Virus record (IMG/VR): IMGVR_UViG_3300020202_000061 | Span: 186,001 to 250,000 of that record | DNA length: 64,000 nt | Direction: 5' to 3' (one strand) | In this document: piece after piece, positions 1,314 to 62,238 of the stretch | How positions within the stretch are numbered: the stretch's first letter is position 1 | How the letters are laid out: each line of letters starts with the position of its first letter | Made by a program: the position numbers and the translations under genes | The notes under the pieces: generated by a model | Databases searched by the model: none | What the model saw: only the letters and a program-made list of their open reading frames with translations | What the model was told of the DNA's origin: nothing

Positions 1314-2056
1314 CCGCAATGCTTCGCTCGACTCTGGCCGCCGCTATTGGCTGGGCCGACCCCACTCAGCGTCATCTGGTGGAACCGCCGATGAAGGATG
1401 GTGACTGGATGAAGCCGCTAGAGCGGGCCATCTTCATGGTGTTCGCCATGAACAAGACTGGTCCCAACGCAGACCTGCTGCGCCGAGCCGCCACCCAGTA
1501 TCTCCAAGGTGGTCGGATCGAATTCGACGATCCTGATCATCCTTCGGAGCATCTGGCCGAACAACCCTATCTGGAGTGTCTGGACTGGTACCGGAAGGAA
1601 CAGGAGCGCAAACAGCAGGTTCGGAACAAGCACGAACTGAGCCTCCAGCCTCTGGTTCTGACGCCAGAGCAGCAGGCCGAGATCATGAAGCCGGACTACG
1701 ATTTCCCTCGGTTGAAGAAAAACTCCAGCCGAGTCGTGGCCATGCTCTCGCATGTCATTCCGGAGATCGTGCACACCCACAGCAGTTGGGGTGCGATCTG
1801 GTCGAACAGCGCCAACACCAGCCACATCATGAATTCGATGGTTCGCCACGGAATTCTGGTGGTTGTCGAGGCCGTTCCCGACCGAAGCATCATGGCGGCC
1901 AAGGTCCGCAGCGGTCCGCAGTACGAGCGTGCCCTGGCTAAGTTCGGGATCAAGCCGGATTGGCGACCAACCGGAGTCAAAAAGGGTGTGAACTACGACT
2001 ATTATAATCAGGTCGCCACCGGACAAATCCCGCCGAAATTCCCTCACGGGGCTTGA
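1310..2056 (+). CDS. hypothetical phage protein (248 aa)
   Basis: long ORF ending at the next promoter. Confidence 0.7.
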   Translation: MTAMLRSTLAAAIGWADPTQRHLVEPPMKDGDWMKPLERAIFMVFAMNKTGPNADLLRRAATQYLQGGRIEFDDPDHPSEHLAEQPYLECLDWYRKEQERKQQVRNKHELSLQPLVLTPEQQAEIMKPDYDFPRLKKNSSRVVAMLSHVIPEIVHTHSSWGAIWSNSANTSHIMNSMVRHGILVVVEAVPDRSIMAAKVRSGPQYERALAKFGIKPDWRPTGVKKGVNYDYYNQVATGQIPPKFPHGA

Positions 2057-10427: not shown

Positions 10428-10774
10428 AGGGATATCCGAACCACCGGGCGGCCCAGTAATGGGAGTCAGGAAAGTCGGGACACCACGTGGTCATCCGAGA
10501 GGTTAACGGCCTCCAACTGAAAGGTTAGGGTAAACCGCACAGAGACAATACAGCCAAGGGGTTTCGGCCCCGGCGATAGGTGAAAAGTTGGGGCCTAAAA
10601 ATCCCTAAGGGTCCCCGTGAGGGTGACTCGTGCGGCACTTCGGTGGTGCAATTCCAGACCGAGCCTGTGACGGACCACGGGAGGCTCAGGTAGGAAGCAA
10701 AGAATCCAGGAGCAATCCTCGGATCAAGTCGAATGGTGGTTTGAGAAACAGAATCCCGCTTATAGGATATCCCT
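10428..10774 (+). ncRNA. rnpB: bacterial-type RNase P RNA
   Basis: P1 AGGGATATCC/GGATATCCCT; CAGGAAAGTCGGGACACC, ACAGAGACAATAC, GGTGAAAAG and ACAGAATCCCGCTTAT match conserved regions CR-I to CR-V. Confidence 0.88.
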
Positions 10775-10826
10775 TGATTTCCACCTCTACGCGCACCAAA
10801 TCGCAACAAACAACTTTGGAGATACC

Positions 10827-14679: not shown

Positions 14680-15429
14680 ATGCAAGGCATTTACAAGATC
14701 AACGGTCTGGTCCATTGGACCGAGCGTGAAATTCGTCTGCGTGAGAGATTCATCACGGAGTTCGAATACGATGTCCGTGCATTCCTGCTCGGGACGAATC
14801 CTGCCTGGAACATTTCCCGTGTAGAAGGTCCCCTATTGACCCCGTTGGGGTTGATTTCCGCCGCGTACACTCCGAGTGACGTGTTCGTGCAGGAAACCTT
14901 CGAGAATGAAACACCGCTGGTTCTGCGCCCGGAAACCACTCCTGCGACCTACGCCTGGATGTGCCATCTGATCGAGCAGCAGGAGGCTCGCTTTCCGATG
15001 TGCGTATGGCAGGCCGGTAAATCGTTTCGTCGTGAACAGGATCAGGTCTCCAAGAACATGCGCCTGAAAGAATTCTATCAGATGGAATTCCAGTGCGCGT
15101 TCACGGCCGATTCCGCCAATGACTACCACGGCGCGAGTCTTGAACCGGTTCGTCGCATGCTGGAGAGTGCAATCTGCTTACCCACTCGTCTGGTTGAATC
15201 CGACCGACTTCCCGCATATTCCCAGATCACCATGGATGTCGAAGTTGACAACGGTGACAAATGGATGGAGGTCTGCTCGATTTCTCGCCGTACGGATTTT
15301 CCTATGAAGGCACGATTTGCCAACAAAAAGGGAGAGGTCGTCGAAAAGGAACTGTTGATCTTGGAGATCGCCATTGGTTTGGATCGCTGTGTTTACAATA
15401 GGTTAATTCGTGAATCCAGAATCCAGTGA
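14680..15429 (+). CDS. stand-alone class II aaRS catalytic core (GlyRS/ProRS/ThrRS-like)
   Basis: LRPET, GKSFRRE (motif 2), EFYQMEFQ, IGLDR (motif 3); no anticodon-binding domain. Confidence 0.8.
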   Translation: MQGIYKINGLVHWTEREIRLRERFITEFEYDVRAFLLGTNPAWNISRVEGPLLTPLGLISAAYTPSDVFVQETFENETPLVLRPETTPATYAWMCHLIEQQEARFPMCVWQAGKSFRREQDQVSKNMRLKEFYQMEFQCAFTADSANDYHGASLEPVRRMLESAICLPTRLVESDRLPAYSQITMDVEVDNGDKWMEVCSISRRTDFPMKARFANKKGEVVEKELLILEIAIGLDRCVYNRLIRESRIQ

Positions 15430-32698: not shown

Positions 32699-32776
32699 GG
32701 CGGTGTACTGCTTAGCGGCCTAAAGCGGGTGTCTCTAAAATACTGATCGCGGGTTCGAATCCCGCCACCGCCGCCA
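32699..32776 (+). tRNA. amber suppressor tRNA (CTA anticodon)
   Basis: GGCGGTG/CACCGCC-G-CCA; GGTGT-CT-CTA-AA-ATACT; own promoter at 32662. Confidence 0.82.
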
Positions 32777-33865: not shown

Positions 33866-34155
33866 GCCGCACGCGTCTGCGTCTGGCCAGGATGATCGAG
33901 GCCAAACTCCGCGATCTCGGCCACTCTGTTCGTGTCGATCCCGCCCGACTTGATCCCGCCCAGGGTTATTGGCGAACGGATTCCCGTGCCGACGTGATGC
34001 GCTGGGAAGGTTGGTTCGAGCGTGAGATCGAACCCGGCCGATGGATGCGCCAGAGCATCTGTTCCTGGGATACCATGACGGACTGTGTCAGGGGTTTCGA
34101 GATTTGGCAGGACACCGGATGGTCGTGGGAAGTCGGCGCTCACAAAAACTCTTGA
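33850..34155 (+). CDS. hypothetical protein
   Basis: ORF ending at promoter 34152. Confidence 0.5.
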   Translation: MARGIGRTRLRLARMIEAKLRDLGHSVRVDPARLDPAQGYWRTDSRADVMRWEGWFEREIEPGRWMRQSICSWDTMTDCVRGFEIWQDTGWSWEVGAHKNS

Positions 34156-34275
34156 CAAACTCCTCGGTTTGACATAAGTATTCATCAACCGTTATCCCCG
34201 CCGAGTGCGGGTTGTGATTTGAAAGCGATTGTGCTGTCAACTTGGGACTATGAGGATCAAACCATGTTGTAGGAT

Positions 34276-39018: not shown

Positions 39019-39255
39019 ATGACGTTTACCCGCGAGCAGGTCGATGCCATCACCATCGGTACGATGATCACCAGAGGTATCGATGACCGTTGGAGTGATC
39101 CTCATCCGGTTGTGAGTATTCACGCCAAGCAAAATGACATCGAGGGCAAGCTGTTCGTCTGTGGTTACACCACCTACGGCGAAGATGCTCAGATGAGTTT
39201 CTCCATCAAGGAAGGCGATCCCACGGATTTTCGCCATTACAGGATCGGCGAATGA
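39019..39255 (+). CDS. hypothetical protein
   Basis: AGGAG RBS after promoter 38967. Confidence 0.6.
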   Translation: MTFTREQVDAITIGTMITRGIDDRWSDPHPVVSIHAKQNDIEGKLFVCGYTTYGEDAQMSFSIKEGDPTDFRHYRIGE

Positions 39256-40499
39256 CCCAACCCTTTCCATATCCAGTTCGCCGGGTACTGGCGCGTCTGA
39301 ACCACGCGGGGTTCGAGGCACGTGTGGCGGGCGGCGCAGTTCGTGATCTTCTGCTGGGCCAGACTCCGAAGGATTACGATGTGGCGACCACGGCACGGCC
39401 CGAACAGGTTGTGAAACTGTTCGAACAATGCGGGCTCCAGGTGATCCCCACCGGTATCTTTCACGGAACAGTCACGGTAGTTGTGCCGGACGATGAGCCG
39501 GGCACCCCGACGAACCTCGTCGAGAACGAGGACCTCCGTTTCATGCAGATCGAGATCACCACGTTGCGGGTGGATCGGGAAACCGATGGCCGCCACGCCG
39601 TGGTCGAATTCACCGACGACTGGGAGGCCGACGCCGCCCGCCGAGACTTCACGATCAATGCGATGTTCATGGACGCCGAGGGTGAGGTCTACGACTTCTT
39701 CCACGGCCAAGAGGACCTGGAACATTCGGTGATCCGGTTCGTCGGCAACGCGGATGAGCGCATTCAGGAGGATTACCTCCGTATCTTGCGATTCTATCGG
39801 TTCGCAGCACGCTTCGGCAACAACGACATGTGTCCGATGATGAGCGACCGCGAAGCTATCCGCCGGAACCTCGCCGGGCTCAAACAGATCAGCGGTGAGC
39901 GCATCTGGATGGAACTGACCAAACTGATCCGGTTGCCCGGCGCGAGCATGGCCCTCTACTGCATGTGCCTGGATGGTGTGCATGAGGCTATTGACCTGTC
40001 GATGATCCGGACTGCCGAGTTCATCAACATCCGTTATCATACGGATGATCCGATCACGTGTTTGGTCGGAGCTTGCTCGGCCGACCGTATGCCCCTGGCC
40101 GAGGGCTATCAAACCCTCATGGACACTCTGTGGCATCGCTACAAGGTCAGCAAGGTTGAGGTCGCCCGAGCCCAGTTTCTGATCGCCCATCGTGAACCGG
40201 GACGGTTTCAGTCGCTCCAGGACTATCTGCGGCTGATCACCCAGCAGGACCCGAAGAGCCAGGAGTTCGCAAAGGAATCCGCGCAGTTCCTGGCACTGCT
40301 GCATGATCGACCGGGGATTTCCACGACCATCGCGGTTTGGACAATCCCAACGTTTCCTCTGACCGGGAAGGACTTGATCCAACAGGGTATCCTGCCCGGC
40401 GCGGATATGGGCCGAATGTTGAAACGGGCCAAGGTCTTTTGGATCGATTCCCAATACACCCTTACCACGGAGGAATTGGTAAATTTAGTGAGAACCTGA
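39252..40499 (+). CDS. cca: CCA-adding tRNA nucleotidyltransferase (class II)
   Basis: GGAVRDLLLG..PKDYDVAT, RRDFTINAM, DYLRILRFYRF, SGERI. Confidence 0.9.
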   Translation: MTQPFPYPVRRVLARLNHAGFEARVAGGAVRDLLLGQTPKDYDVATTARPEQVVKLFEQCGLQVIPTGIFHGTVTVVVPDDEPGTPTNLVENEDLRFMQIEITTLRVDRETDGRHAVVEFTDDWEADAARRDFTINAMFMDAEGEVYDFFHGQEDLEHSVIRFVGNADERIQEDYLRILRFYRFAARFGNNDMCPMMSDREAIRRNLAGLKQISGERIWMELTKLIRLPGASMALYCMCLDGVHEAIDLSMIRTAEFINIRYHTDDPITCLVGACSADRMPLAEGYQTLMDTLWHRYKVSKVEVARAQFLIAHREPGRFQSLQDYLRLITQQDPKSQEFAKESAQFLALLHDRPGISTTIAVWTIPTFPLTGKDLIQQGILPGADMGRMLKRAKVFWIDSQYTLTTEELVNLVRT

Positions 40500-43722: not shown

Positions 43723-43727
43723 ATTAT

Positions 43728-43818
43728 GGGTTTCCTTCTTCACGGCGGTCTGTAAAACCGCTGGCGCAAAATCGAGTGAAGCGGATGCTGAGAGGTTCGA
43801 CTCCTCGGAAACCCACCA
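43728..43818 (+). tRNA. tRNA-Tyr(GTA)-like, lacking a D hairpin
   Basis: GGGTTTC/GAAACCC-A-CCA; only 9 nt in place of the D arm; 28-nt extra region. Confidence 0.65.
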
Positions 43819-43891: not shown

Positions 43892-43975
43892 GCGGTCGTG
43901 GTGTAACGGTAGCCACGCTGGTCTCAGAAGCCAGTGCCGAAAGGCGTGGGAGTTCGACTCTCCCCGGCCGCACCA
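43892..43975 (+). tRNA. tRNA-Leu(CAG)
   Basis: cloverleaf with variable arm, CCA. Confidence 0.92.
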
Positions 43976-44112
43976 ACTTCGGGTCGTTTGGATTGGGTTA
44001 TTGCTCCATAAGCACGAGGGTGTAGGTTCGAATCCTACTCTGCCGACCAATACCGGCAGATAGCATAACGGTAGTGCACGTAAAACATCTGGTCCGCCTT
44101 TTATCCGAAGTT
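43976..44112 (+). ncRNA. YrlA-like Y RNA / circularly permuted tRNA module, copy A
   Basis: CTTCGGGT(C)G/TTATCCGAAG bulged stem; T arm, TCTGCCG-ACCA-ATAC-CGGCAGA, then D arm. Confidence 0.72.
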
Positions 44113-44118
44113 GATTTC

Positions 44119-44200
44119 GCGCCTATGGCGAAACTGGTAGACGCACTGGAATGAGAGTCCAGCGAGTAAAATCATGGAGGTTCGAGTCCTCTTAGGCGCA
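44119..44200 (+). tRNA. tRNA-Leu(GAG), no encoded CCA
   Basis: GCGCCTA/TAGGCGC-A then CTA. Confidence 0.88.
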
Positions 44201-44203
44201 CTA

Positions 44204-44339
44204 AACTCGGGTCGTTAGATTGGGTTATCGTAGCCCGTCCCCATCGTGGGTTCGAATCCCACTACCTGTCGTATGACGGGTATAGCCAAGTGGTTAAGGC
44301 AGGGACTTGTATAAACCAGTCGGCCTTTTTATCCGAGTT
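44204..44339 (+). ncRNA. YrlA-like Y RNA, copy B
   Basis: AACTCGGGT(C)G/TTATCCGAGTT; T arm, acceptor closed by GTAT, D arm, GGGAC/GTCCC stem. Confidence 0.72.
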
Positions 44340-44343
44340 GTTT

Positions 44344-51751: not shown

Positions 51752-51942
51752 GCATGGACGCAACCCCTACCGGCCGTTGGGAAATCACCCCGTGGTGGCT
51801 CCGCCTGATCGGGAAGCCCAGCTTTCGTATGTTCTATGAGGGTTGGGGCAGTGATTTCATGGGTAGTGTGCCGGACTATTGGGAATACTCTTGGGAGCCT
51901 TGGAAGGAAGAGTTTCTTCACGACAACACAAAAACCCCTTGA
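51748..51942 (+). CDS. Trp-rich hypothetical protein
   Basis: ATGA coupling. Confidence 0.5.
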   Translation: MSMDATPTGRWEITPWWLRLIGKPSFRMFYEGWGSDFMGSVPDYWEYSWEPWKEEFLHDNTKTP

Positions 51943-51977
51943 CATCCCCATGGGGTTCCCCTAAATAGGTCTTGGAT

Positions 51978-52056
51978 AGGACGAGCCGCTTGGTTCGGGT
52001 TATTGCTTGGTGCAACGGGCGTAAGCCCATATCCCGGTCCGCTTTTTGTTCGTCCT
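51978..52056 (+). ncRNA. minimal Y-RNA-like element D
   Basis: GGACGAGC(C)G/TTGTTCGTCC bulged stem; GGGTTATTG; promoter at 51939. Confidence 0.55.
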
Positions 52057-52077
52057 CCTTTTTAGAGGTGCTTTGAG

Positions 52078-52220: not shown

Positions 52221-52296
52221 TGCCCCTTGGCGCAATTGGTAGCGCAGCGGACTCTGAATCCGAAGGTTCCAGGTTCGACCCCTGGAGGGGCAACCA
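52221..52296 (+). tRNA. tRNA-Gln(CTG)
   Basis: TGCCCCT/AGGGGCA-A-CCA; CT-CTG-AA. Confidence 0.92.
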
Positions 52297-52401
52297 AACA
52301 CGGGCCGACTGGCTTGGATTATTGGATGAAGGCTGAGGACGATGACTCCTCTTGCCGCAGGGCTTCGAAACCCTGGTCCAGGTCTCTAACTTGTCCGTGT
52401 T
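52297..52401 (+). ncRNA. Y-RNA-like element E
   Basis: AACACGGGC(C)GA/TTGTCCGTGTT; GGATTATTG; internal TTCGA hairpin. Confidence 0.6.
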
Positions 52402-52406
52402 CTTGA

Positions 52407-61097: not shown

Positions 61098-61174
61098 GGG
61101 CGCGTAGAGGAGAGGCCGTCCTCGGCACCCTGTCACGGTGCATATCGCGGGTTCGAATCCCGTCGCGCTCGCCA
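61098..61174 (+). tRNA. tRNA-Asp(GTC)
   Basis: cloverleaf, G73, CCA. Confidence 0.92.
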
Positions 61175-61255
61175 ACGAGGGCCGAACTGAATCGGATTAT
61201 TGTTCTTCCAAAACAAGAGGGATAGCATCCCACCGGTTCTCAAATTTGCCCTCGT
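61175..61255 (+). ncRNA. minimal Y-RNA-like element F
   Basis: ACGAGGGC(C)GAA/TTTGCCCTCGT; GGATTATTG. Confidence 0.62.
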
Positions 61256-61261
61256 GATTTT

Positions 61262-61344: not shown

Positions 61345-61572
61345 AGTAGGAATCTGCGGGTTCATGTCCCCGAGTGTTGACATGATGGCGGCTGGTAGCC
61401 GAGGCAATGAGATTCATGCAACCACCCTTCGGGGTGTATCTCAGGCCGGTTCTCGGACCTAAACCGAGTGGTGGAAGGAGCGCGAGGACGTGCGAATCTC
61501 GCCCCCGGTTCCCGGACCTAAACCGGGTGGAGACGGTGATCCGTTGGGCGTGCCGGTGCCCTAGTACCGGCG
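61345..61572 (+). ncRNA. unassigned structured RNA with twin ACCUAAA hairpins
   Basis: CTCGG-ACCTAAA-CCGAG and CCCGG-ACCTAAA-CCGGG. Confidence 0.5.
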
Positions 61573-61829: not shown

Positions 61830-62075
61830 ATGAATGAGATCGTCGATCTAAAGCGTCGTGCCGGAATCCACAAAATATCTCGGTTGGATAATCCCGAGGG
61901 GTATCTCCAGGCGGTGCTCGATGCGAAATTGGAACTGGACGACTTCAAGAAGTCTATCCAGCATCTGACCTGGACGCCCGAGTTGGAAGCGAAATTCACC
62001 GAGGTATTCGCGTTCATGGATCAGGCCCTAAAATCGGGGATTGAACAAGCCACGAATCGTCGTCGTAACTCTTGA
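61830..62075 (+). CDS. late protein with KRRAGI motif
   Basis: TAAATA upstream; MNEIVDLKRRAGI. Confidence 0.65.
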   Translation: MNEIVDLKRRAGIHKISRLDNPEGYLQAVLDAKLELDDFKKSIQHLTWTPELEAKFTEVFAFMDQALKSGIEQATNRRRNS

Positions 62076-62110
62076 CATTCCCTCTGATCTGTCCTAAGTA
62101 GGATGTTGAT

Positions 62111-62232
62111 GACGGGTCGTTAGAATTGGGTTATTGTTGCCTTGATAGCAAACGAGTGGGTTCGATTCCCACGCATCCTCGGAAGAGGGTGTCCTTGGCG
62201 GTAGTTCTAGTCCGGTTCGCCTCTTATCCGTC
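62111..62232 (+). ncRNA. YrlA-like Y RNA, copy C
   Basis: GACGGGT(C)G/TTATCCGTC; TGGGTTATTG; T arm then looped acceptor-like stem; promoter at 62072. Confidence 0.68.
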
Positions 62233-62238
62233 TTCTTT

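What the first reader, a model, noticed from the sequence alone, without database searches (positions are those of the whole stretch)
43976..44112. Permuted tRNA copy that retains discriminator + CCA and a 4-nt linker
Seen: GTAGG-TTCGAAT-CCTAC (T arm), TCTGCCG-A-CCA, ATAC, CGGCAGA (perfect 7-bp acceptor partner), then TA-GCAT-AACGGTA-GTGC (D arm). An anticodon-like remnant GCTCCATAAGCACG lies upstream of the T arm. The other two copies close the acceptor with a plain loop. Inference: this looks like a recent circular permutation of a real CAU tRNA. RNase P (encoded in this window) plus 3' trimming could open it into a two-piece, aminoacylatable RNA, as with permuted two-piece tmRNA of alphaproteobacteria.
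Basis: partly seen in the sequence, partly recalled or inferred. Interest (0 to 1): 0.85.

Follow-up and report, generated by a model that had tools for sequence, protein, structure and literature searches.

The report
Phage Y RNA that mimics tRNA
The "permuted tRNA" is a member of the known YrlA family of bacterial and phage Y RNAs (partners of the Ro60 protein with a built-in tRNA look-alike), here placed between tRNA genes of a 347-kb phage with no Ro60 gene found nearby.

Summary
Two sister copies exist (44203-44340, 62108-62235). This is not a recently permuted tRNA-Met. It is a YrlA-type Y RNA, a family already described as resembling circularly permuted tRNAs. A covariance model built only from 37 RNAs lying just upstream of Ro60 genes in other viral contigs matches the three copies over its full length (79.7, 60.1, 34.2 bits; E 3e-17 to 3e-6). 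All modules are shared: terminal stem, GGGYCG motif, internal helix ending GGUUAY, V hairpin, T/closed stem/D, return strands. The proposed RNase P opening with a CCA end has a published precedent in Mycobacterium smegmatis YrlA. I also find discriminator+CCA directly after a 7-bp stem in 7 of 56 Ro60-adjacent elements (1.2 expected) and in the closest relative, L102. The window supplies RNase P RNA (L15 GGU kept), a CCA-adding enzyme, and tRNA genes with encoded CCA. What is unusual: no Ro60 (TROVE) gene in 121.6 kb around the copies, and placement inside tRNA operons. Aminoacylation is unsupported. New member of a known kind; moderate interest.

The parts
43976..44111 (+). Copy 1, complete YrlA-like Y RNA (the finding)
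   Evidence: R1 model built from Ro60-adjacent RNAs: 79.7 bits, E 3e-17, model 1-135. Rfam YrlA RF02553: 36.8 bits, full length. The MFE fold gives the same helices.
43976..43984 (+). Copy 1 terminal stem P1, 5' strand (ACUUCGGGU). It pairs with 44103-44111 and contains the start of the GGGUCG motif.
   Evidence: Two pairs differ compensatorily from copy 2 (C-G/U-A versus A-U/C-G), read directly from the sequence.
43989..43998 (+). Copy 1 internal helix P2, 5' strand. It pairs with 44087-44096 and is followed by the UUAU (YUAY) motif.
   Evidence: fold. All 8 P2 pairs covary across the family. YUAY check.
44002..44014 (+).
   Evidence: Same position as the V arm of Ro60-adjacent elements. Defined as the V stem-loop in PMC4201824.
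44022..44038 (+). T arm
44039..44060 (+). Closed acceptor-like stem (AS): 7 bp TCTGCCG/CGGCAGA with loop A-CCA-AUAC. The predicted RNase P site is between 44053 and 44054.
   Evidence: Position-specific CCA enrichment in relatives. RNase P/CCA precedent in PMC4201824.
44061..44081 (+). U8-A9, D arm (GCAU-AACGGUA-GUGC), A26 and the 3-bp P3 strand CGU, which pairs with 44014-44016
   Evidence: A15 (44068) with U48 (44021) gives a Levitt pair. Copy 2 has G15:C48, read from the sequence.
44087..44111 (+). Return strands of P2 (44087-44096), internal loop CCUUUU, and P1 (44103-44111)
   Evidence: The same 3' block (CUUUAUCCG-like) occurs in Ro60-adjacent L084 and L102.
44203..44340 (+). Copy 2: YrlA-like with an 8-bp closed stem (loop GUAU), a class-II-like D arm, a 5-bp P3, and no CCA
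   Evidence: R1 60.1 bits, E 2e-12, full length. Fold z-score -4.1.
62108..62235 (+). Copy 3: YrlA-like with a 7-bp closed stem (loop CGGAAG) and a degenerate D arm. P1 is 62111-62117 with 62226-62232.
   Evidence: R1 34.2 bits, E 3e-6, full length with the D arm deleted. Sequence.
62072..62100 (+). Promoter-like site TTGACA-N17-TAAGTA placing the transcription start about 7-10 nt before copy 3's P1
   Evidence: Motif occurs 9 times against 0.01 expected; most of the other sites lie just upstream of tRNA genes.
51977..52057 (+). Short Y-like RNA (P1, GAGCCG motif, P2, UUAUUG, two small hairpins, no tRNA module), preceded by the same promoter motif at 51939-51967
   Evidence: R1 21.1 bits, E 0.004, full-length model. 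Sequence. Promoter.
52296..52402 (+). Short Y-like RNA between two tRNA-Gln genes, with a T-loop-like hairpin
   Evidence: R1 19.5 bits, E 0.011. Sequence.
61173..61257 (+). Short Y-like RNA between tRNA-Asp and tRNA-Pro
   Evidence: R1 20.3 bits, E 0.007. Sequence.
43892..43975 (+). tRNA-Leu(CAG), which abuts copy 1. Its encoded CCA ends one base before P1.
44119..44201 (+). tRNA-Leu(GAG). Its RNase P site lies 7 nt after copy 1's P1 and would set the Y RNA 3' end.
   Evidence: spacer UGAUUUC; the processing role is inferred.
10428..10778 (+). Phage-encoded class A RNase P RNA with the L15 GGU retained
   Evidence: 146.6 bits. Alignment shows consensus cCGGGUAgg against UCAGGUAGG.
39252..40499 (+). 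tRNA nucleotidyltransferase (CCA-adding enzyme family)
   Evidence: Pfam PolyA_pol 7e-33. PHROG tRNA nucleotidyltransferase 1e-52. NCBIfam CCA tRNA nucleotidyltransferase 177.5 bits, below the cutoff of 290.

Best explanation
The element is a YrlA-type Y RNA, that is, a Ro60 (Rsr)-binding non-coding RNA. Its 5' and 3' ends pair to form the protein-binding module: terminal stem P1, the GGGUCG internal-loop motif, and helix P2. Its middle folds as a tRNA look-alike: V hairpin, T arm, acceptor-like stem closed by a loop, D arm, and a 3-bp remnant of the anticodon stem. The phage carries three such RNAs plus three shorter Y-like RNAs. All are embedded in tRNA operons, so they are made with the tRNAs and released by tRNA processing. 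Copy 1 belongs to a sub-class whose 7-bp stem is followed by discriminator+CCA. In this sub-class RNase P most likely cuts before C44054 and exonucleases trim AUAC, with the CCA-adding enzyme able to repair the end. That would give a 74-nt and a ~59-65-nt piece that stay together through P1, P2, the 7-bp stem and the D/T-loop contacts. The resulting RNP would have a free CCA end, as shown for M. smegmatis YrlA. By analogy with Deinococcus, Salmonella and Thermus phage phiLo, the likely function is to tether or gate a Ro60 ring (host-encoded, or phage-encoded elsewhere in the genome) with an exoribonuclease such as PNPase during infection. Shown here: family membership by sequence and structure, the recurrence of NCCA, and the presence of the processing machinery. 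Inferred: cleavage, Ro60 binding, and function.
For: A model built only from 37 Ro60-adjacent RNAs of other viral contigs hits copies 1-3 over its full length at 79.7, 60.1 and 34.2 bits. tRNA dimers give only partial hits (model positions 42-103). Rfam YrlA gives 36.8 bits full length, which is more than the published Ro60-adjacent Bxz1 YrlA gets (32.5 bits, partial). The family structure is supported by covariation: 22 of 25 pairs are compensatory on a MAFFT alignment. With the window copies included, 95.3% of cells are paired against 64% in shuffles and about 40% when slid, and 31 of 35 pairs change on both sides. L102 has the identical 5' block, two strong hits directly upstream of a TROVE fragment (E 3e-57), and a 7-bp stem followed by U-CCA. 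CCA lies exactly one nucleotide after a 7-bp stem in 7 of 56 Ro60-adjacent elements, against 1.2 expected (P 2e-4), and at 0 of 157 other loop offsets. RNase P RNA with the L15 GGU is present, as is a CCA-adding enzyme. 29 of 30 tRNA genes have CCA at the called 3' end. The tRNA-type promoter motif precedes copy 3 and one short element. Literature: YrlA resembles a circularly permuted tRNA, and the 7-bp M. smegmatis YrlA is cut by RNase P and CCA-tailed, with both halves bound by Rsr (PMC4201824; 10.1101/312249). A phage Ro60 binds phage Y-like RNAs and host PNPase (PMC12135203).
Against: No TROVE/Ro60 gene was found in the window or in contig 167.3-288.9 kb (121.6 kb) by tblastn, profile HMM or precomputed Pfam. 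Published YrlAs lie within 4 kb of Ro60. The strict GNCGAAN0-1G motif is absent (GUCGUU instead). The Rfam score is below the gathering threshold. There are no expression, cleavage or binding data. The +1 nucleotide is C rather than the more usual G, and -1 is C. Copy 3 lacks a proper D arm.
Confidence: 0.88

Rival explanations
1. One reading: a recent circular permutation of a genuine tRNA-Met(CAU) gene, which RNase P and trimming convert into a two-piece, aminoacylatable tRNA-like molecule comparable to two-piece tmRNA.
For: The permuted-tRNA topology, 7-bp stem, A73-CCA, RNase P RNA and CCA-adding enzyme are all real.
Against: No window tRNA shares the acceptor or D-arm sequence, and the tRNA-Met genes are not among the best matches. 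The 'anticodon remnant' is the family-wide V hairpin and has C, not U, at the position corresponding to 33. The flanks are the conserved Ro60-binding module, not tRNA sequence. ARAGORN finds no tmRNA or tag peptide. The Rfam tmRNA model matches only the T arm at 7.5 bits. The acceptor has G3:C70, not the G3:U70 alanine identity pair used by tmRNA.
Confidence: 0.03
2. A Ro60-independent tRNA decoy. The phage has kept Y-RNA-derived tRNA mimics, one of them opened to a free CCA end, to occupy or distract tRNA-directed enzymes. These could be host acceptor-end or elbow-recognising toxins, modification enzymes, RNase P or the CCA enzyme. No phage Ro60 would be involved.
For: No Ro60 was found within 121.6 kb. 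The elements sit in tRNA operons next to RNase P RNA, a CCA-adding enzyme, an RNA ligase and an aaRS-core paralogue. Copy 1 follows the phage tRNAs' CCA-A ending.
Against: The Ro60-binding module (P1, GGGYCG, P2) is conserved as well as the tRNA module, and it covaries. That is hard to explain without a Ro60-type partner. The three short elements keep only that module. The closest relative is Ro60-linked. 65% of the genome is unread.
Confidence: 0.08
3. An artefact of tandem tRNA genes or tRNA pseudogene debris: the T arm of one tRNA followed by the D arm of the next.
For: Chen et al. warn that tRNA dimers mimic YrlA. The window's Ala-Ala, Val-Val and Gly-Gly dimers do give partial model hits.
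Against: Those hits cover only model positions ~42-103. Copies 1-3 match positions 1-135. Their flanks are not tRNA halves, and ARAGORN and Rfam call no tRNA there.
Confidence: 0.01

Closest known systems
YrlA (Y RNA-like A; Rfam RF02553) of bacteria and phages, especially Mycobacterium smegmatis YrlA
   Same: Same module order: terminal stem from the 5'/3' ends, Ro60-site motif, YUAY, V hairpin, T arm, closed acceptor-like stem, D arm. The tRNA tertiary-pair nucleotides are the same, including a covarying 15:48 pair. As in M. smegmatis YrlA, copy 1 has a 7-bp stem, the determinant reported for RNase P cleavage and a CCA end.
   Different: No Ro60 gene within 4 kb; none was found in 121.6 kb. 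The motif is GUCGUU rather than GNCGAA. The discriminator and full CCA are genome-encoded, whereas M. smegmatis encodes one C and has CA added. The RNAs are interleaved with tRNA genes under tRNA-type promoters.
Phage Ro60/Y-RNA systems (mycobacteriophage Bxz1 gp220 locus; Thermus phage phiLo Ro60 with Yrl1/Yrl2)
   Same: Phage-encoded, with multiple long and short Y-like RNAs per genome. In 35 of 131 cases the Ro60-linked elements also lie within 300 nt of tRNA genes.
   Different: In those phages the RNAs are stacked directly upstream of the Ro60 gene. Here they are dispersed over about 18 kb of tRNA arrays without a detectable Ro60.
Circularly permuted tRNA genes of Cyanidioschyzon merolae and some archaea
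   Same: 3' half before 5' half, acceptor initially closed by a loop, and opening by RNase P/RNase Z.
   Different: Those precursors carry a bulge-helix-bulge junction that a splicing endonuclease cuts and a ligase circularises, restoring a true anticodon loop. Here the ends form a long bulged helix with only a 3-5-bp anticodon-stem remnant and no anticodon loop.
Two-piece (permuted) tmRNA of alphaproteobacteria
   Same: A permuted gene giving two base-paired pieces with a tRNA-like acceptor/T domain and a CCA end.
   Different: No tag reading frame, no pseudoknots, no G3:U70, and no match to tmRNA models beyond the T arm.

Membership tests
YrlA Y RNA (PMC4201824; RF02553) | Conserved T stem-loop and D stem-loop with tRNA-invariant nucleotides | tested here: met
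   Copies 1 and 2 have GUUCGAAUC T loops, U8, A14, G18G19, and an R15:Y48 pair that covaries (A:U versus G:C). Copy 3 lacks a proper D arm.
YrlA Y RNA (PMC4201824; RF02553) | [quoted passage not shown] | tested here: met
   7, 8 and 7 bp in copies 1-3.
YrlA Y RNA (PMC4201824; RF02553) | 5' and 3' ends pair into a long bulged stem (the Ro60-binding module) | tested here: met
   P1 and P2 appear in the folds. There are compensatory differences among the copies, and all P1/P2 pairs covary across the family.
YrlA Y RNA (PMC4201824; RF02553) | GNCGAAN0-1G motif near the 5' end | tested here: not met
   The window copies have GUCGUU(U/A)G. However, only 5 of 37 Ro60-adjacent phage elements meet the strict motif, all 37 and all six window elements meet G[AG]N[CT][CA]G, and Ro60-adjacent L102 has the same GUCGUU.
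YrlA Y RNA (PMC4201824; RF02553) | YUAY at the start of the V region, plus a V stem-loop | tested here: met
   UUAU is present in all six elements. Copies 1 and 3 have a V hairpin with a 7-nt loop.
YrlA Y RNA (PMC4201824; RF02553) | Encoded within about 4 kb of a Ro60/TROVE gene on the same strand | tested here: not met
   No TROVE signal in the window or in contig 167.3-288.9 kb, while positive controls score above 700 bits. The remaining 226 kb could not be read.
YrlA Y RNA (PMC4201824; RF02553) | Reaches the Rfam gathering score (69 bits) | tested here: not met
   36.8 bits. The criterion is uninformative for phage members, because the published Bxz1 YrlA scores 32.5 bits.
YrlA Y RNA (PMC4201824; RF02553) | Full-length match to a model of Ro60-adjacent RNAs | tested here: met
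   R1 gives 79.7, 60.1 and 34.2 bits over model positions 1-135, within the range of Ro60-adjacent hits (33-127 bits).
YrlA Y RNA (PMC4201824; RF02553) | Physically bound by Ro60/Rsr; modified by TruB/DusA | not testable with these tools
   Needs co-immunoprecipitation or EMSA, and modification mapping.
Two-piece tmRNA | Tag-peptide reading frame with resume codon, and an alanine identity pair G3:U70 | tested here: not met
   ARAGORN finds no tmRNA. The acceptor has G3:C70 (read). The Rfam tmRNA model gives 7.5 bits, on the T arm only.
Circularly permuted tRNA genes (C. merolae type) | Joined ends restore a 5-bp anticodon stem with a 7-nt loop through a bulge-helix-bulge junction | tested here: not met
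   The ends form P1/P2 with internal loops. The P3 remnant is 3 bp in copy 1 and 5 bp in copy 2, with no anticodon loop.

The most novel reading that the evidence does not exclude
This jumbo phage has no Ro60 of its own. It uses Y-RNA-derived tRNA mimics as free-standing parts of its tRNA toolkit. Copy 1 is opened by the phage's own RNase P to a two-piece molecule with a genuine ACCA end. That end is then charged (for example by the anticodon-domain-less class II synthetase-core protein at 14680-15429), or it serves as bait for host enzymes that attack tRNA acceptor ends. This would be a new, Ro60-independent function for the YrlA fold.
Probability: 0.1. Interest if true: 0.7.

Novelty: new member of a known kind. 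Interest (0 to 1): 0.35.

Why it matters
It removes a tempting false lead: this is not a newly permuted tRNA or a tmRNA-like device. It also adds three points to the Y RNA picture. First, a 347-kb phage carries six Y-like RNAs inside its tRNA operons, far from any detectable Ro60. That raises the question of whether phage Y RNAs can work with the host's Ro60 or without one. Second, an encoded discriminator+CCA right after a 7-bp stem is a recurrent, position-specific sub-class of phage YrlAs. This suggests that the RNase P-opened two-piece form seen once in M. smegmatis is a selected state rather than an oddity. Third, Rfam's YrlA threshold misses phage members, so these RNAs are probably under-annotated in phage tRNA arrays.

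Tried and rejected
- Stop-codon recoding: reading through TAG, TGA or TAA does not merge ORFs cleanly, so the standard code fits.
- Megablast of 12 kb against the phage collection: no match.
- Exact 5'-block search in viral contigs: only the window's own contig.
- Ro60 on the source contig, four attempts. The TROVE profile scan listed only the best 80 of 455 hits, so absence from the list is uninformative. The L102 Ro60 bait returned 64 loci, all listed, and the contig was not among them. Walking with the look-up of encoding contigs covered 121.6 kb with no TROVE.
- Divergent Ro60 among large unannotated ORFs: the 666-aa protein looks ParB-N-terminal-like, and the 414-aa protein has no solved relative.
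- The 765-aa VWA protein: its VWA domain is N-terminal and there is no TROVE signal.
- Supplementary tables of PMC4201824 are not held, and the review PMC10870794 is not held.
- Most of the 15 metagenome contigs with the 5' block look like chance or coding matches. Only L102 and L113 were informative.
- Natural variants of copies 1 and 2 in other assemblies: places with the same neighbouring proteins were collapsed and not shown.

Full report
**Observation.** The window is a one-strand phage region packed with 30 tRNA genes and a class A RNase P RNA. It comes from a 347,504-bp viral contig, at approximately positions 186,001-250,000. A simple descriptor, a 5-bp T arm followed directly by a self-closed 7-bp stem, finds exactly three sites in the window. 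All are on the + strand, at 44022, 44246 and 62156. This confirms two sister copies whose closing loops are plain. Its outermost 9 nt on each side pair with each other, and two of those pairs differ compensatorily between copies 1 and 2. Copy 3 has a further compensated 7-bp version.

**What it is.** Rfam's YrlA model (Y RNA-like, RF02553) matches 43994-44110 over its full length at 36.8 bits, below the gathering score of 69. To judge whether that shortfall matters, I located the published Ro60-adjacent YrlA of mycobacteriophage Bxz1, just upstream of gp220 'Ro-like RNA binding protein'. It scores only 32.5 bits, and only partially. The Rfam threshold therefore does not discriminate phage members.

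I then fetched about 150 viral loci encoding TROVE/Ro60 proteins. Running the same descriptor on the first 90 of them finds tRNA-like elements stacked just upstream of Ro60, one to four per locus. Their flanks share every module of the window's copies:
- a terminal stem;
- a GGGYCG motif;
- an internal helix ending in GGUUAYC;
- a V hairpin;
- T arm, closed stem and D arm;
- a YUAAAC junction;
- return strands.

I aligned 37 non-redundant Ro60-adjacent elements, none from the window. RNAalifold found compensatory changes at 22 of 25 pairs. I added the internal helices and built covariance model R1. With filters off, R1 matches the three copies over its whole length:

| Copy | Bits | E-value |
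|---|---|---|
| 1 | 79.7 | 3e-17 |
| 2 | 60.1 | 2e-12 |
| 3 | 34.2 | 3e-6 |

Tandem tRNA genes, the false-positive mode Chen et al. warned about, give only partial matches over model positions ~42-103. Ro60-adjacent elements themselves score 33-127 bits. With the window copies included, 95.3% of cells are paired, against 64% in shuffles and about 40% when partners are slid. 31 of 35 pairs change on both sides (this alignment is fitted to the model).

A metagenome scan for the copies' exact 5' block found contig L102. There, two strong full-length hits lie directly upstream of a TROVE gene fragment. The window's particular GUCGUU sub-type is therefore Ro60-linked elsewhere.

'Recent circular permutation of a real CAU tRNA' is not supported. 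No window tRNA shares the acceptor or D-arm sequence, and the tRNA-Met genes are not among the best matches. The supposed anticodon remnant is the family's V hairpin. The architecture is shared with unrelated viral contigs, so it is old.

The permuted-tRNA look itself is already in the literature. [quoted passage not shown]

The proposed mechanism also has a direct precedent. M. smegmatis YrlA has a 7-bp stem and is cut by RNase P in vitro and in vivo. It then acquires CCA, and both halves co-precipitate with Rsr (PMC4201824).

I add that discriminator+CCA placed exactly after a 7-bp stem recurs in 7 of 56 non-redundant Ro60-adjacent elements. Only 1.2 are expected (P about 2e-4), and CCA occurs at none of 157 other loop offsets. 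It also occurs in L102. The remaining loops are mostly GAAA or UUCG caps.

The window supplies the processing machinery:
- an RNase P RNA that keeps the L15 GGU, which pairs with CCA;
- a CCA-adding-enzyme homologue;
- tRNA genes of which 29 of 30 have CCA at the called 3' end, 25 of them followed by A, as in copy 1's ACCA-A.

Cleavage at 44053/44054 and trimming would give a 74-nt and a 59-65-nt piece. Cleavage remains an inference. Aminoacylation has no support: there is no G3:U70, no tmRNA features, and no anticodon.

**Context and expression.**
- Copy 1 starts one base after the CCA of tRNA-Leu(CAG) and ends 7 nt before tRNA-Leu(GAG).
- Copy 2 sits in the same way between Leu(GAG) and Leu(CAA).
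- No promoter-like or terminator-like site separates them from the tRNAs on the + strand.
- A motif TTGACW-N16-18-TAARTA occurs nine times against 0.01 expected. Six sites lie just upstream of tRNA genes, one just upstream of copy 3, and one just upstream of a short Y-like RNA.
- Three weaker full-length R1 hits (51977-52057, 52296-52402, 61173-61257) keep the terminal stem, motif, P2 and UUAU but lack the full tRNA module.
- Comparable 68-82-nt hits lie next to Ro60 in other loci.
- Proximity to tRNA genes is not unusual for the family: 35 of 131 Ro60-upstream elements are within 300 nt of a tRNA.

**What is unusual.** No Ro60 was found. The searches were tblastn with Bxz1 Ro and a TROVE profile against all ORFs of the window. 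The same profile was run against six-frame ORFs of contig 167.3-288.9 kb, reached by walking. Nothing scored better than E 0.56, while Ro60 proteins not used to build the profile score above 700 bits. Large unannotated ORFs are not Ro60-like. About 226 kb of the contig could not be read, and collection scans were capped. A distal phage Ro60 or a host Rsr therefore remains possible.

**Verdict.** This is a bona fide YrlA-family Y RNA, a new member of a known kind. The RNase P/CCA two-piece form is plausible for copy 1. The most novel reading still open is a Ro60-independent role in the phage's tRNA toolkit.

Noticed in passing
window 10428-10778 (+): A phage-encoded class A RNase P RNA (146.6 bits, full-length model) with the L15 GGU retained. 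No RnpA protein was looked for.
   Followed up: partly
window 7544, 14549, 15438, 20373, 24998, 34152, 51939, 61051, 62072 (+): Promoter-like motif TTGACW-N16-18-TAARTA, 9 copies against 0.01 expected, all on the + strand. Six lie just upstream of tRNA genes and two just upstream of Y-like RNAs. The site at 34152-34180 has no annotated RNA downstream.
   Followed up: partly
window 51977-52057, 52296-52402, 61173-61257 (+): Three short Y-like RNAs (terminal stem, G[AG]GCCG motif, P2, UUAUUG) without a full tRNA module. They are reminiscent of YrlB and of the 68-82-nt hits next to Ro60 in L025, L056, L068, L071 and L084.
   Followed up: partly
window 43727-43815 (+): A tRNA-like sequence with an 8-bp acceptor, T arm and ACCA that ARAGORN does not call. 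The tRNA-Sec model gives 30.3 bits, below its cutoff of 47. Its identity is unknown.
   Followed up: no
window 32699-32776 (+): A tRNA with anticodon CUA (amber suppressor; ARAGORN labels it 'Pyl'), although the ORFs fit the standard code.
   Followed up: partly
window 14680-15429 (+): A 249-aa class II aminoacyl-tRNA-synthetase catalytic core only. It is closest to dimeric GlyRS (64.8 bits against a cutoff of 312) and has no anticodon-binding domain. It sits beside two tRNA-Gly genes.
   Followed up: partly
window ~61447-61530 (+): A roughly 26-nt motif (ccggttcYcggacctaaaccgRgtgg) occurs twice between two tRNA-Pro genes, with compensatory-looking differences. Its nature is unknown.
   Followed up: no
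L302:3548-4759 and L303:2055-3641 (same contig, upstream of the window): An Rnl-type RNA ligase (PF09414) and a 528-aa protein with an N-terminal anti-CBASS Acb1 domain lie 5-17 kb upstream of the window. These are RNA-repair and counter-defence functions near the tRNA region.
   Followed up: no
L056 (IMGVR_UViG_3300020202_000892): A different phage contig from the same metagenome carries a Ro60 gene preceded by four Y-like RNAs. One has a 7-bp stem followed by C-CCA, and tRNA calls abut two of them.
   Followed up: partly
L113:~1970-2040 (-): A 64-nt mini Y-like RNA with the same GGGTCGTT...GGGTTAT block sits inside a 13-tRNA array on a 2.8-kb metagenomic contig. This suggests that tRNA-array-embedded Y-like RNAs occur in other phages.
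   Followed up: no
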